Shown: positions 91-39,190 of the stretch, piece after piece
How the letters are laid out: each line of letters starts with the position of its first letter
How positions within the stretch are numbered: the first letter of the stretch is position 1
Assembly: GCF_001194135.2 (NCBI RefSeq)
Contig: NC_068987.1
Location: forward strand, 4,005,993 to 4,069,992
DNA length: 64,000 nucleotides
Direction of reading: 5' to 3'
Origin: Octopus bimaculoides
Taxonomy: Eukaryota
Made by a program: the position numbers and the translations under genes
Notes under the pieces: generated by a model
The model's database searches: none
Told to the model about the DNA's origin: nothing
What the model saw: only the letters and a program-made list of their open reading frames with translations

Positions 91-229
91 CTCACATTTT
101 GGGACTTCAGGTTCATTATTCAGACACCGAAGACATGTACCATTCCTATGATTTTTGTATGAAGCAAATTTGGTATCATTCTCAGCAGCAAAGCTCATTT
201 GAAGATTTAGTAATTGATTCTGTGACAGA
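91..229 (-). CDS. LARGE: LARGE stem exon ending just before the GT8 domain (LSQNQLLNLQMSFAAENDTKFASYKNHRNGTCLRCLNNEPEVPKCE); gene continues left of the window
   Basis: Acceptor ttgtag|, donor |gtaaga; ends in ...PKCE like LARGE1 ...VEKCE, which precedes TIHVAIVCAG; phase 2 to 0. Confidence 0.87.
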
Positions 230-922
230 CTACAATAACAATAACAACAATACTGTATGAGGTCATTGTTTTTTTTTTTTTATAGAAAAATGTGGGCAAA
301 ATGTTTTATTTGCCTGAGCAATAAAGTTTTCATTTAACTCTTAACAATATAAATACTGTTAAATATTATGCTTATTCATTTTTTAAAACTAATCATGCAT
401 TATCATATAGCTTTGAGATTTTTGATGATGTGATTTTCTATTTTCAGAATGACATTGTAGGGTAGGTGTGAGAGGTCTGATAAGAGCAGTCTGAATAAAG
501 AACAAGTAGAATATTTGGTCCGGACATGGTTCAGGTGCCCAAGAGTTACAGTTCTTTAGCTGTAACATAAACAATAATTCGAACACACACACACAAGTTA
601 CGTGTGTTTGAATCTGCTTCTAACTCATAAACAATAACAGAAGAAGACTTGTTAACCCTTTCGTTACTGTATTTATTTTGAGATGCTCTGTGTTTCTTTC
701 ACTTAATTTTAAATAGTGGGACTGAACCTGAAACCATGTGGTTGCAAGGCAAGTCTCTTAACCACACAGCCATGCATATGCCTATATATATTAATATGTT
801 TGTTGCAGGTAGGCCCTACAAGCATATAAGTTTGTTTTCCAAGAACAAGTTAACTTGTGGGCTTATAGAGAAAATACTCAACATCTGGTTATGTCGTAGC
901 ATATTTAAGAAAAGGGACAAAC

Positions 923-1037
923 CTTAACTGCTTTTGAAGAAACTGGTTCTTCTCTTCCATTTCTCTAACTCGTTGTGCCAGCTTTGCTTCCAAGCGACTG
1001 ACACCGTAGGCTCCATTGTTACCGTAAGAAATATAAT
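923..1037 (-). CDS. LARGE: LARGE coiled-coil stem exon (DYISYGNNGAYGVSRLEAKLAQRVREMEEKNQFLQKQLS)
   Basis: Acceptor tttcag|, donor |gtttgt; RVREMEEKNQFLQKQLSLSQ matches the vertebrate LARGE1 stem RVREVEEENRALRRQLSLAQ; phase 1 to 2. Confidence 0.9.
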
Positions 1038-1833
1038 CTGAAATGAATCAAAGACAAAAAAACAGATGCTTCAGAGAAGAAGAATCAATATATATAAATA
1101 AAAAAAAATCAGTGGTATTGATCTGGAAGCAATATCACTTATGGGCATACTGTGTTTAAAAACACAAAGATATATCAGTAGTACATGAAAAATTGACCAG
1201 CAGTAGTGGTTGCTTTGCTAAATGTGCATTTCTGCTTCATTATGCTTTGTCAGTAGCATGTACCCACTGCCAACTACATACAGAGACATCTGATATAGCA
1301 AAATGCTGACTGAAAAATCACTGATGCTGCAAGTAGCTGCTCAACTGAATAAGAATTCATTATATGCAATAGAAGCAGTATTGGATTAAAATAACTATCT
1401 ATATATCATACTTAATGCAGATACATCGCTAAAAGGCAAATTTAGCAAGTTTGCTTCATACAAAGACCACATGAATAGTACAGCAATGTAAGCTATTAAG
1501 ATACTTCTGCTTCCATGGACTACAACAGTGGGCAGTATTTCTCTCTGTAACTAGTCATAGATAGACTTATCCATCAGGAACAGAATGATTTTTGCTATGG
1601 GCATAGTTCACAGCAATAATGGTGTTTTATGAATCCTTAATTCTTTGGCCTTTACTGCCCACCATCTTATCAAACTGAGAATTAGTACAGAAATAAAAAG
1701 GATGAATAAATGCACCAATCAGAGATTATAATTAGCTAATCGTTATCTACAAATCTGTAAGCTACATGTGATTATGATGACGCATCATGGTTTATGTTCC
1801 CAGAATATAATAATAACTGTATTTGTTACTCAC

Positions 1834-1927
1834 CATCAGCGCTGATAGTAAGGTAGACCAGGAAGAACATTGGAAAAGCGTAGACCACAATCAGCACCAA
1901 CAAGAATTTCTTCTTCACTCGGAACAT
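1834..1927 (-). CDS. LARGE: LARGE xylosyl-/glucuronyltransferase, signal-anchor exon (MFRVKKKFLLVLIVVYAFPMFFLVYLTISAD); the exon itself begins at 1938
   Basis: Acceptor ttatcag| at 1939-1940; basic N-terminus plus hydrophobic TM segment typical of type II Golgi glycosyltransferases; donor G|gtgagt; splices in frame to the next two exons. Confidence 0.85.
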
Positions 1928-1980
1928 TTTGGATTCGTCTGATAATAAAAATTGAAAAGTAAGATCATCATTATCATTAA

Positions 1981-2200
1981 CCCTCTCGTTACCATATTTC
2001 TGTTGAGATGTTCTGTGTTTCTTTCAATTACTTTAAATATAACAAAGAATTTAGTGAAATAACTTAGTCATCATTAAGCTGGTGTTAGGAACATAAATTG
2101 TGACTAAGGTTTGGTGGAAGATTTTAATTCAGAACTTACGAAAACAAGACATTTGTACTCAGAGCCAGAACCGGTTTCAGCCGGGTTGGTAATGAAAGGG
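1981..2200 (+). mobile_element. TTAA-flanked piggyBac-like MITE, family 1
   Basis: TTAA followed by CCCTCTCGTTACC...GGTAATGAAAGGG terminal inverted repeats; further copies at 27214-27415 and 34177-34396 (opposite orientation) and fragments near 655 and 15172. Confidence 0.7.
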
Positions 2201-37679: not shown

Positions 37680-37744
37680 AGCAAAGATCAAGATTTTATT
37701 GAAAGTATTTGGTGATAGCATTCCTGGGTTGAGCCATTTTACAA
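37680..37744 (+). CDS. PEX16: PEX16 coding exon 9 (AKIKILLKVFGDSIPGLSHFT)
   Basis: Acceptor ttccag|, donor |gtaagc; corresponds to [21 protein letters not shown]; 65 nt, phase 2 to 1. Confidence 0.92.
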
Positions 37745-37817
37745 GTAAGCCTTTAAATTACTACATCTTAACACATTTTCCTTACATGCATATAACTGTT
37801 ATTGCTAGCAGCAGTAG

Positions 37818-38275
37818 CACTACTACTACTACTACTACTACTACTACCACCACTACTACCACTACTACTACTGCTATTGCTACTACTACCACTACCACCA
37901 CCACTACTACTACTACCACTACCACCACTACTACTACTACTACTACCACTACCACTACTACCACCACCACCACTACTACTATTACTACTACTACCACTAC
38001 TACTACTACTACTACTACTACCACCACCACCACCACCACTGCTGCTGCTACTACTACTACTACTACTACCACCACCACTACTACTACCACCACCACCACT
38101 ACCACTACTACTACTACTACCACCACTACTACTACTACAACCACCACTACTACTACTACTACTACTACTACTACCACTACTACTACTACTACCACCACCA
38201 CTACTACTACTACTACTACTACTACTACTACTACTACTACTACTACTACTACTACTACTACTACTACTACTACTA
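37818..38275. repeat. Compound (ACT/ACC)n trinucleotide tract, about 460 bp, in PEX16 intron 9
   Basis: Directly visible; source of the poly-T, poly-V and poly-L artefact ORFs. Confidence 0.97.
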
Positions 38276-38934
38276 GCGAGAATTTACAAAAAACAAAAGA
38301 CGAAGATGGGTGTGCAAACAACAAACAGATGTATTAGTTTAACGCTCGGGAAGTGAGAAAGTCTTTTATGTTTCGAGCCTTCGCTCTTCAACAGAAGGGA
38401 AAAACAGAAATAAACAGGGAGAGAAAACAGAAAAAGGTATAGTGGCTAGCGATCTATCACGGTGAAGTACTACTTCTACTACTACTACAAACTATCTATC
38501 TAATGTCCATATTTTCCCTGCCTGTATGGTTCAACAGGATTCGGTGAACCAGAAGACAATGTAAACCTCCAGTGTCCACTTTGGCACTGTTTTTGCTGCT
38601 TGGCAGTTTGATGTGCAAAAACCAGTAGAATGGGGTACCACAGTTGAAAAACTTGGTGCAGAATACTGTCTCACAAGGTCTCATCTAACTCATACTAGCA
38701 TGAAAAAATGGACATAAAAGTGTTGTTGTTGATGATAATATATATATATATGTATATGTGTGTATATATATTGTGAAGGGGTTGGTTATTTAACTGTTTG
38801 TGTTCAAAGCTTTGATTTGCTGACCCTTATTTTCAAAAATGTAGTATGGAGATGGACTTAGGCAATGGTAGAAATAAAGGGCCATGCTGTATACTTGAAT
38901 TGAATAGTAGCCCGCGCTCTTAACCACTACACCA

Positions 38935-38980
38935 TATGCCTGATGAAGGCTGGAGGGTATATCAGCCGAAACGTTGTGTT
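38935..38980 (+). ncRNA. Minimal type I hammerhead ribozyme-like motif at the end of a Penelope-type repeat fragment, in PEX16 intron 9
   Basis: CTGATGA (38940-46), extra A, stem II GGCTG/CAGCC, GAAAC, GTT triplet; helix I ATGC/GTGT with two wobble pairs; palindromic AACGTT in place of helix III. Confidence 0.6.
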
Positions 38981-39128
38981 AACAACAAACAAGATGAGGA
39001 CAAGTATCCGTCAAATGTAAATAATGTACATAATTCCTCATCTCTTAAATTATAGAACTGTAGACATTTAATGTTTCGTTATGTTTCGTCTTAATTGATA
39101 TATTTAAACATTTTTTATCTCTTTTCAG

Positions 39129-39190
39129 ATCCTTTGATTTCCTACATTCCATATTGGCAAAAGGTCTATTTCTACCTGTGGTCCAGCTAA
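39129..39190 (+). CDS. PEX16: PEX16 terminal coding exon (NPLISYIPYWQKVYFYLWSS*)
   Basis: Acceptor tttcag|; matches the C-terminal PLMDYLPTWQKIYFYSW; TAA at 39188-39190. The spliced CDS totals 1029 nt (342 aa plus stop). Confidence 0.95.

What the first reader, a model, noticed from the sequence alone, without database searches (positions are those of the whole stretch)
91..39190. PEX16 and LARGE are head-to-head, mirroring the human PEX16/LARGE2 (GYLTL1B) pair
Seen: PEX16 exons on + starting at 24334, LARGE coding exons on - at 91-1927, and a strong minus-strand donor at 24158 right next to the PEX16 start. Established knowledge: human PEX16 and LARGE2 are adjacent and divergent on 11p11.2. 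Inference: if this is a cephalopod, a lineage known for heavily scrambled gene order, the pair would be an ancient bilaterian microsynteny. It would link a peroxisome biogenesis gene and the matriglycan polymerase through a shared promoter.
Basis: partly seen in the sequence, partly recalled or inferred. Interest (0 to 1): 0.72.

Follow-up and report, generated by a model that had tools for sequence, protein, structure and literature searches.

The report
Octopus PEX16–LARGE head-to-head gene pair
In this octopus DNA the peroxisome gene PEX16 and the sugar-chain enzyme gene LARGE point away from each other and probably share one start region, an arrangement also seen in a clam, a lamp shell, a worm and a rodent; it is a real but fairly ordinary case of ancient gene neighbours.

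Summary
The window is Octopus bimaculoides chromosome CM046607.1.

- **PEX16:** ten GT-AG exons on + (24334-39190) translate exactly to the annotated 342-aa protein.
- **LARGE:** the minus-strand exons at 1938-91 are the N-terminus, 121/125 identical to Octopus vulgaris/sinensis LARGE.
- **Donor:** CAG|GTGAGT at 24159|24158 is the only copy of that 9-mer in the 64 kb.

LARGE and PEX16 lie head-to-head with no called gene between them in Solemya (bivalve), Lingula (brachiopod), Owenia (annelid) and Mastomys (rodent LARGE2). The pair is separated in a teleost and a sea star. It was not seen within 10 kb in amphioxus or Saccoglossus.

Two RNA contigs from another cephalopod join spliced LARGE and spliced PEX16, with 324 nt between the start codons. 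Octopus, Lingula and Owenia share one layout upstream of PEX16: an inverted CCAAT pair, then a LARGE-strand donor at 175-203 nt. This points to a shared bidirectional promoter and a 21.3-kb first LARGE intron, which holds all three gaps. No octopus RNA was available to confirm that junction.

It is a new example of a well-known class, so interest is moderate.

The parts
24334..39190 (+). PEX16 coding region, 10 exons: 24334-24448, 27695-27807, 29146-29279, 31081-31192, 33614-33707, 34696-34836, 36054-36126, 36942-37061, 37680-37744, 39129-39190 (stop 39188-39190)
   Evidence: Spliced translation is identical to P0002, O. bimaculoides PEX16, PF08610. The annotated CDS range matches.
24159..24333 (.). 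Putative shared bidirectional promoter, containing the non-coding LARGE exon 1 (minus strand). The exon's 3' end is at 24159; its 5' end (the transcription start) is unknown.
   Evidence: Holds the only CAGGTGAGT and the only ATTGG-N15-25-CCAAT in the 64 kb. Lies at the edge of the strongest CpG zone. Positions 24219-24285 are homologous to the stretch between the two coding regions in RNA contig L011.
24153..24161 (-). Consensus splice donor CAG|GTGAGT of the inferred LARGE exon 1 (last exon base 24159)
   Evidence: Best-scoring donor on that strand in the whole window and a unique 9-mer. Its distance from the PEX16 ATG (175 nt) resembles the inferred RNA junction in L011 (179), the Lingula donor (177) and the Owenia donor (203).
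24253..24280 (.). Inverted CCAAT-box pair, ATTGGTCGATTAATCCAGTATAACCAAT (NF-Y-type)
   Evidence: Single occurrence in the window. The same element sits at the same place in L011, Lingula and Owenia.
2812..24158 (-). Inferred LARGE intron 1 (21,347 nt), rich in SINE-like repeats. Contains the three assembly gaps 3345-3354, 5080-5397 and 17288-17535.
   Evidence: No convincing coding ORF and no gene called in the part that was looked up, 14334-24333. Repeats. Gap tests.
2694..2811 (-). Strong acceptor ...TTTATTTCCAG| at its 5' edge, an in-frame ATG at 2709 (MFQKL), and donor A|GTAAGT at 2694|2693.
   Evidence: Identical in sequence to the first coding exon of O. sinensis/vulgaris LARGE, P0128.
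1834..1938 (-). LARGE exon 3, with the conserved start codon at 1927 (MFRVKKK...) and the signal-anchor transmembrane segment. It is preceded by an acceptor.
   Evidence: Aligns to L002 nt 217-311 and matches P0128.
923..1037 (-). LARGE exon 4 (coiled-coil stem, ...RLEAKLAQRVREMEEKNQFLQKQL)
   Evidence: Aligns to L002 nt 323-411 at 80% identity. Coordinates.
91..229 (-). LARGE exon 5 (stem, ends ...PEVPKCE). The next exon, which begins the GT8 domain, is beyond the left end of the window.
   Evidence: Aligns to L002 nt 424-567. In P0001 and P0128 the sequence continues as (V/I)IHVAIVCAGHNATRDVV.

Best explanation
PEX16 (+) and the single invertebrate LARGE gene (-) form an ancient divergent gene pair, held together by a compact, CpG-rich, CCAAT-box (NF-Y-type) bidirectional promoter just upstream of the PEX16 ATG.

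In the octopus, LARGE transcription most likely starts within about 100-170 bp of the PEX16 start codon. It makes a short non-coding exon 1 that ends at 24159. This exon is spliced across a 21.3-kb, repeat-filled intron to exon 2 (2811-2694), then to exon 3 with the conserved ATG at 1927, and the gene continues leftwards out of the window.

Shown: both gene identities, their orientation, and the same adjacency in four other lineages. Inferred: the position of the octopus LARGE transcription start, the 24159^2811 splice, and promoter sharing as the constraint that keeps the pair together.
For: Gene identity and structure.

Adjacency with conserved 5'-5' orientation and no called gene between:
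- Solemya, 6.4 kb between coding starts.
- Lingula, 4.5 kb.
- Owenia, 1.9 kb.
- Mastomys LARGE2, 5.3 kb.

RNA evidence: contigs L011 and L012, from two unrelated sequencing runs of another cephalopod, each carry spliced LARGE (728 aa) and spliced PEX16 (343 aa) head-to-head, with 324 nt between the ATGs. The PEX16-proximal part of that stretch is homologous to window 24219-24285.

Exon structure: LARGE exons 3 and 2 both begin with acceptors, so at least one exon lies further upstream.

Promoter layout: the unique consensus donor at 24159 and the unique inverted CCAAT pair at 24253-24280 both fall in the 175 bp upstream of PEX16. The same layout is present in Lingula and Owenia.

CpG: observed/expected is 1.0-1.6 at 24200-25800 but 0.07-0.31 around exon 2.
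Against: No transcript from Octopus itself was available. The annotations reachable here give only coding ranges, and these begin at exon 2 in O. sinensis and O. vulgaris.

The 5' UTRs of L002 and L011 are too diverged to align significantly to the window outside the CCAAT core. The exon 1/exon 2 junction in L011 is therefore itself inferred.

The 590-bp block around exon 2 is the best-conserved stretch between Octopus species, at 93.7%. Two ATTGG motifs lie about 150-190 nt upstream of exon 2. An alternative internal promoter is therefore not excluded.

Solemya and Mastomys show no strong LARGE-strand donor within 600 nt of PEX16. Gap 17288-17535 is untested.
Confidence: 0.75

Rival explanations
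1. The genes are neighbours but have separate promoters. LARGE starts just upstream of exon 2 (about 2.8-3.0 kb). The 21 kb is true intergenic DNA. The donor at 24159 is a chance site, or belongs to a short antisense transcript from the PEX16 promoter that is not joined to LARGE.
For: The sister-species LARGE coding models begin in exon 2. The block 3013-2426 is the best-conserved stretch between Octopus species, at 93.7%. Two ATTGG motifs lie upstream of exon 2. Solemya and the rodent have their best LARGE-strand donors about 2-2.6 kb from PEX16.
Against: Exon 2 has a strong polypyrimidine acceptor at 2812|2811. The exon 2 area is among the most CpG-depleted DNA in the window. RNA contigs from another cephalopod physically join LARGE and PEX16. 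The donor is unique in the window and conserved in position in Lingula and Owenia.
Confidence: 0.2
2. The resemblance to the mammalian PEX16/LARGE2 pair is convergent: the two genes became neighbours independently in lophotrochozoans and in vertebrates.
For: Asterias has an unrelated gene upstream of LARGE. No PEX16 was found within 10 kb of LARGE in amphioxus or Saccoglossus. In Betta, PEX16 is paired with a Cys-tRNA synthetase instead. In Lottia the two genes are on different scaffolds, judged from contig lengths.
Against: The same two single-copy genes lie in the same 5'-5' orientation with no intervening gene in Mollusca (two classes), Brachiopoda, Annelida and Mammalia. Independent origin of one specific pair among roughly 20,000 genes is very improbable. 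Losses in rearranged lineages are the normal pattern for such pairs (PMC3514665). The 10-kb flank limit would also have missed the octopus pair itself.
Confidence: 0.05
3. The adjacency in the window is an assembly artefact, created by a misjoin at one of the gaps.
For: Three N-runs lie between the two genes, and gap 17288-17535 could not be checked.
Against: Two of the three gaps are colinear with O. sinensis and O. vulgaris. RNA contigs from another cephalopod link the two genes independently of any genome assembly. The same adjacency is present in four other phyla or classes.
Confidence: 0.02

Closest known systems
Mammalian PEX16-LARGE2 (GYLTL1B) neighbours at human 11p11.2 / rodent orthologous region
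   Same: The same two gene families, in 5'-5' orientation with no gene between. In Mastomys, LARGE2 (-) and PEX16 (+) have 5.3 kb between coding starts and are followed by Frey and a MAPK8IP1-like gene. Both human genes lie in one 323-472 kb 11p11.2 deletion (PMC7693731).
   Different: The octopus gene is the single, unduplicated LARGE. The distance between coding starts is 21.6 kb (from ATG 2709) or 22.4 kb (from ATG 1927). The rodent has no strong LARGE-strand donor within 600 nt of the PEX16 ATG and no inverted CCAAT pair within 400 nt. By my recollection the human transcription starts are about 3 kb apart, which is outside the usual <1 kb definition of a bidirectional promoter.
Conserved ancestral microsyntenic pairs (CAMPs) of Irimia et al. 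2012 (PMC3514665), for example HSPE1-HSPD1
   Same: Two unrelated genes kept adjacent across phyla, in the 5'-5' orientation that is enriched in such pairs. The proposed cause is a shared regulatory region.
   Different: I could not find this particular pair named in any searchable text. The supplementary list of that paper is not held. The pair is absent from the stored part of the cephalopod microsynteny tables, which require blocks of at least 3 genes.
NF-Y / CCAAT-box, CpG-rich bidirectional promoters (Adachi & Lieber 2002, cited in PMC3514665; the NF-Y enrichment is from my own knowledge)
   Same: An inverted CCAAT pair between two divergent genes, local CpG enrichment, and a very short PEX16 5' UTR.
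   Different: Factor binding, transcription starts and co-expression are untested. One partner, LARGE, would reach its coding exons only after a 21-kb intron.

Membership tests
PEX16 (peroxin-16, Pfam PF08610) | Full-length protein matching PF08610 and orthologous to animal PEX16 | tested here: met
   The spliced product is identical to O. bimaculoides PEX16, P0002, which carries PF08610. It is 44-52% identical to gastropod, brachiopod and vertebrate PEX16.
PEX16 (peroxin-16, Pfam PF08610) | Intact gene: open frame and canonical splice sites | tested here: met
   Ten exons, all with AG/GT borders, giving 1029 nt including the stop codon.
LARGE (bifunctional xylosyl-/glucuronyltransferase) | N-terminal signal anchor and coiled-coil stem that continue into the GT8 domain | tested here: met
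   The window exons give 125 aa, 121 of them identical to P0128. In P0001 and P0128 the sequence continues ...PKCE(V/I)IHVAIVCAGHNATRDVV.
LARGE (bifunctional xylosyl-/glucuronyltransferase) | GT8 (PF01501) plus GT49 (PF13896) domains in one polypeptide | tested here: met
   Met by proxy only, because the catalytic exons are outside the window. The orthologous O. sinensis and O. vulgaris loci, which align to window 1-7100, encode the 736-aa P0128 with both domains. Transcript L002 also carries both.
LARGE (bifunctional xylosyl-/glucuronyltransferase) | Matriglycan polymerase activity | not testable with these tools
   Needs an enzymatic assay.
Conserved ancestral microsyntenic pair (CAMP) | Orthologues adjacent, with no intervening gene, in several distant lineages | tested here: met
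   Octopus (the window), another cephalopod (RNA), Solemya, Lingula, Owenia and Mastomys.
Conserved ancestral microsyntenic pair (CAMP) | Orientation conserved (5'-5') | tested here: met
   Head-to-head in all six cases.
Conserved ancestral microsyntenic pair (CAMP) | Present in non-vertebrate deuterostomes or in non-bilaterian outgroups | tested here: inconclusive
   Asterias has a different upstream neighbour. Amphioxus and Saccoglossus show no PEX16 within 10 kb of LARGE. No cnidarian could be reached.
Bidirectional promoter | Divergent transcription starts less than 1 kb apart | tested here: inconclusive
   Inferred from the unique donor 175 nt from the PEX16 ATG and from the joined RNA contigs of another cephalopod. 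No octopus transcription-start data were available.
Bidirectional promoter | CCAAT boxes and CpG enrichment between the two genes | tested here: met
   A unique inverted CCAAT pair at 24253-24280 (69). CpG observed/expected peaks at 24200-25800 (57).
Bidirectional promoter | Co-expression of the two genes | not tested
   No expression data were available.

The most novel reading that the evidence does not exclude
The unit that has been preserved is a specific promoter module, not merely the adjacency. Reading from the PEX16 ATG, it consists of about 36-53 nt, then an inverted CCAAT pair, then about 93-136 nt, then the donor of a non-coding LARGE exon 1. On this reading the module has been kept since at least the lophotrochozoan ancestor. 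The 5' ends of the two mRNAs overlap physically, so no breakpoint can separate the genes without destroying both promoters. That would explain survival through the coleoid genome reshuffling while intron 1 grew from about 1.6 kb (Owenia) to 21 kb (octopus). It would also imply obligatory co-regulation of peroxisome membrane biogenesis and matriglycan synthesis.
Probability: 0.35. Interest if true: 0.55.

Novelty: new member of a known kind. Interest (0 to 1): 0.4.

Why it matters
The pair is a clean, testable example of why some unrelated genes stay neighbours for more than 500 million years. The likely reason here is an indivisible bidirectional promoter, with one partner anchoring its non-coding first exon there and tolerating a very large first intron.

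It corrects the practical annotation of octopus LARGE, whose 5' exons are missing from the reachable O. bimaculoides models. It also flags a possible regulatory link between PEX16 and LARGE/LARGE2 that no searchable paper discusses.

It does not change any general view. Hundreds of such pairs are known, and cephalopods retain many of them.

Tried and rejected
- **N-terminal LARGE search.** It returned only one Logan protein. My query carried two junction errors, and the word index missed P0128. A search with the catalytic part of L002 resolved this.
- **Mapping the 5' UTR of transcript L002 onto the window.** BLAST and Smith-Waterman gave nothing above shuffled controls. The first 69 nt of L002 also fail to align significantly to L011. 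The UTRs are too diverged, so I dropped this as evidence.
- **Local alignment of the L011 inter-coding stretch to the window.** Only the CCAAT core (24219-24285) aligned.
- **Amphioxus and Saccoglossus look-ups.** No PEX16 lay within the 10-kb flank limit. The octopus pair would have been missed by the same test, so these count as inconclusive rather than as absence.
- **Search for other genes in 2812-24158.** I found only short or low-complexity ORFs and SINE-like repeats.
- **Rfam scan of the window.** No hits.
- **Literature.** No paper links PEX16 with microsynteny or with a bidirectional promoter. No paper cites the SRA runs, so the species behind L002 and L011-L016 is unknown. The Irimia supplement is not held. 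The Schmidbaur tables have no PF08610 entry in the stored part, and one supplement query timed out.
- **Apparent TATA box.** The TATAAAA 22 nt upstream of the donor on the minus strand is too close to the donor to leave room for an exon, so I do not treat it as a TATA box.
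Full report
**Provenance.** The spliced PEX16 product matches NCBI Octopus bimaculoides PEX16 at 100%. The look-up places it on chromosome CM046607.1 of GCA_001194135.2. Window position 24334 equals record position 4,030,326. The window is 36.7% G+C, has a CpG observed/expected ratio of 0.59, and contains ten N-runs.

**PEX16.** There are ten exons on the + strand: 24334-24448, 27695-27807, 29146-29279, 31081-31192, 33614-33707, 34696-34836, 36054-36126, 36942-37061, 37680-37744 and 39129-39190. 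All have AG/GT borders. Joined, they give 1029 nt whose translation is identical to P0002 (342 aa, PF08610).

**LARGE.**
- The minus-strand exons are 1938-1834 (ATG at 1927, MFRVKKK..., signal anchor), 1037-923 (coiled coil) and 229-91.
- They align at 70-80% nucleotide identity to nt 217-567 of L002. L002 is a 2.7-kb RNA-derived Logan contig from another cephalopod that goes on to encode the GT8 (PF01501) and GT49 (PF13896) domains.
- The annotated LARGE of O. vulgaris and O. sinensis (P0128, 736 aa, both domains) begins MFQKLNESKMFRVKKK.... The window-encoded 125 residues match it at 121 positions.
- The genomic loci of those species (L003, L004) are colinear with window 1-7100.
MFQKL is encoded at 2709-2694, inside an exon at 2811-2694, and that stretch is identical in the three Octopus species.
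- In the more distant cephalopod transcripts the upstream frame is closed by a stop. The conserved initiator is therefore probably the ATG at 1927.
- Exons 3 and 2 both start at good acceptors, so at least one further 5' exon must exist.

**The donor near PEX16.**
- CAGGTGAGT lies at 24161-24153 on the minus strand, with last exon base 24159 and GT at 24158-24157.
- It is the only copy of this 9-mer on either strand of the window, against 0.40 expected for the whole 64 kb.
- It is the top-scoring donor on that strand with a generic donor matrix. I wrote that matrix from general knowledge.
- It sits 175 nt upstream of the PEX16 ATG.
- Between the donor and the ATG lies the only ATTGG-N15-25-CCAAT element in the window, at 24253-24280.
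- CpG observed/expected is 1.0-1.6 across most of 24200-25800, which holds the highest CpG counts in 1-40 kb. The surroundings of LARGE exon 2 (2200-3400) score 0.07-0.31, below the median of 0.38.
- The only promoter-like island is therefore at the PEX16 start, not at exon 2.

**RNA evidence from another cephalopod.**
- The PEX16 relative P0004 (71% identical) is carried by 13 Logan contigs.
- Two of the listed contigs come from unrelated runs: L011 (SRR8281693, 4293 nt) and L012 (SRR29271475, 4276 nt). Each also carries the complete, intron-free LARGE reading frame (728 aa) on the opposite strand.
- In both, 324 nt separate the two ATGs.
- Both reading frames are spliced, so these contigs derive from RNA.
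- Their fusion means the 5' ends of the two mRNAs overlap or abut in that species.
- L011 2920-2989 aligns to window 24219-24285, including both CCAAT boxes. The boxes keep nearly the same spacing from the ATG: -79/-56 in L011 against -81/-58 in the window.
- The LARGE-only transcript L002 aligns to L011 only up to L011 2855, at ...ACAG|GTGCTTACC.
- That break lies 179 nt from the L011 PEX16 ATG. It is the counterpart of the octopus donor at 175 nt.
- This junction is inferred rather than proven, because the genome of that species was not available.

**Other phyla.**

| Lineage | Arrangement | Distance between coding starts |
|---|---|---|
| Solemya velum (bivalve) | LARGE(-)/PEX16(+), no gene called between, consecutive locus tags | 6.4 kb |
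| Lingula anatina (brachiopod) | LARGE(-)/PEX16(+), no gene called between | 4.5 kb |
| Owenia fusiformis (annelid) | head-to-head, no gene called between | 1.9 kb |
| Mastomys coucha (rodent) | LARGE2(-)/PEX16(+), then Frey and an SH3/PID (MAPK8IP1-like) gene | 5.3 kb |

- The rodent order matches the human 11p11.2 order as I recall it. It is also consistent with both human genes lying in one small deletion (PMC7693731).
- In Betta splendens, PEX16 is instead head-to-head with a Cys-tRNA synthetase 267 bp away. LARGE2 appears to be on the same chromosome, judged from matching contig lengths.
- Asterias has an unrelated gene upstream of LARGE.
- Amphioxus and Saccoglossus show no PEX16 within 10 kb of LARGE by tblastn. 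The same test would have missed the octopus pair.
- In Lottia the two genes appear to be on different scaffolds, judged from contig lengths.
- The pair is thus present in three lophotrochozoan phyla and in a mammal. Descent from the protostome-deuterostome ancestor, with several later losses, is much the most economical reading.

**Conserved promoter layout.**
- Lingula has its only inverted CCAAT pair at 37-67 nt upstream of the PEX16 ATG. A TAG|GTAAGT donor on the LARGE strand lies at 177 nt.
- Owenia has the CCAAT pair at 38-66 nt. Its only TAGGTAAGT in 62 kb lies on the LARGE strand at 203 nt. A strong acceptor follows, 117 nt before the annotated LARGE ATG.
- The expected number of donors that good within 600 nt is 0.009 for octopus, 0.15 for Lingula and 0.08 for Owenia.
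- Solemya has a single ATTGG at -62. Solemya and the rodent lack a nearby donor; their best candidates lie 2.0 and 2.6 kb away.

**Gaps.**
- All three lie in the inferred LARGE intron 1 (24158-2812), so no reading frame crosses them.
- Gap 3345-3354 is bridged by one continuous alignment in both O. sinensis and O. vulgaris.
- The flanks of gap 5080-5397 (poly-A and a TA microsatellite) are colinear in both species, with 291 nt between them in O. sinensis.
- Gap 17288-17535, next to a TA microsatellite, has no comparative cover.
- The interval has no convincing coding ORF. No gene is called in the 10 kb upstream of PEX16, window 14334-24333, which is the part the look-up covered. There is no Rfam hit.
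- It is full of SINE-like repeats that recur in the PEX16 introns.

**Mechanism.** The best-supported reading is a shared, NF-Y-type, CpG-rich bidirectional promoter. LARGE places a short non-coding exon 1 beside the PEX16 start, and in octopus repeats have inflated its first intron to 21.3 kb. The gene identities, the orientation and the cross-phylum adjacency are shown. The octopus LARGE transcription start, the 24159^2811 splice and co-regulation are inferred. The main rival, at about 0.2, is an independent LARGE promoter just upstream of exon 2.

**Comparison and novelty.** This fits the class of conserved ancestral microsyntenic pairs, in which 5'-5' orientation and bidirectional promoters are enriched (PMC3514665). 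Squid retain about 275 ancient microsyntenic blocks, similar to a scallop (PMC9023564). Survival of one such pair in an octopus is therefore not in itself surprising. I found no searchable text that names this pair as conserved, but the relevant supplementary lists were not available. My verdict is a genuine, correctly read finding that adds a new member to a known kind, of moderate interest.

Noticed in passing
window 44368-49310 (minus strand): The gene downstream of PEX16 lies tail-to-tail with it. It is annotated as a 197-aa product with no Pfam hit. One open segment, 49074-49310, gives a weak, sub-threshold Geminin match (E=0.014...YWKDYAEQQCQDLTEAKRENNAL...). It may be a geminin-family gene.
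   Followed up: partly
window 18458-18614, 11277-11467, 3621-3831, 6478-6757, 25898-26060, 32990-33155; also 1977-2205, 27207-27408, 34173-34454: Two families of roughly 150-280-bp dispersed, SINE-like repeats are shared with O. sinensis and O. vulgaris. They lie in the LARGE introns and in the PEX16 introns. Many contain the recurring frame ...CTRLQSDLAEFLQLDALPN....
   Followed up: no
window 37796-38334: A roughly 540-bp trinucleotide microsatellite sits in PEX16 intron 9. It reads as poly-Thr, poly-Leu/Pro or poly-Tyr/His depending on the frame.
   Followed up: no
L007 1875-10001 (Betta splendens): In this teleost PEX16 has a different head-to-head partner, a Cys-tRNA synthetase whose coding start is only 267 bp away. 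LARGE2 is not within 10 kb and appears to be on the same chromosome, judged from matching contig lengths.
   Followed up: no
L018 10001-10210 and 36260-49789 (Owenia fusiformis): The annotated Owenia LARGE (798 aa) has a roughly 70-aa N-terminal extension before the conserved MIRLKRKY start, so it probably begins in the 5' UTR. A sulfotransferase gene is nested on the opposite strand inside a LARGE intron.
   Followed up: no
L002 218-763 and 744-2423: The Logan LARGE transcript L002 is split into two overlapping ORFs. Contigs from other runs give an uninterrupted 734-aa protein (P0123), so the split is probably a frameshift in that assembly.
   Followed up: partly
window 24166-24173 (minus strand): An ATG (..GCCATGTTCTACAG|) lies just before the inferred exon 1 donor. 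If it is transcribed and spliced to exon 2, it would open a 12-codon upstream ORF in the LARGE 5' UTR.
   Followed up: no
The word-indexed protein search did not return P0128 for a 118-aa query that is nearly identical to its N-terminus. Negative results from that tool with short queries should therefore be read with care.
   Followed up: partly
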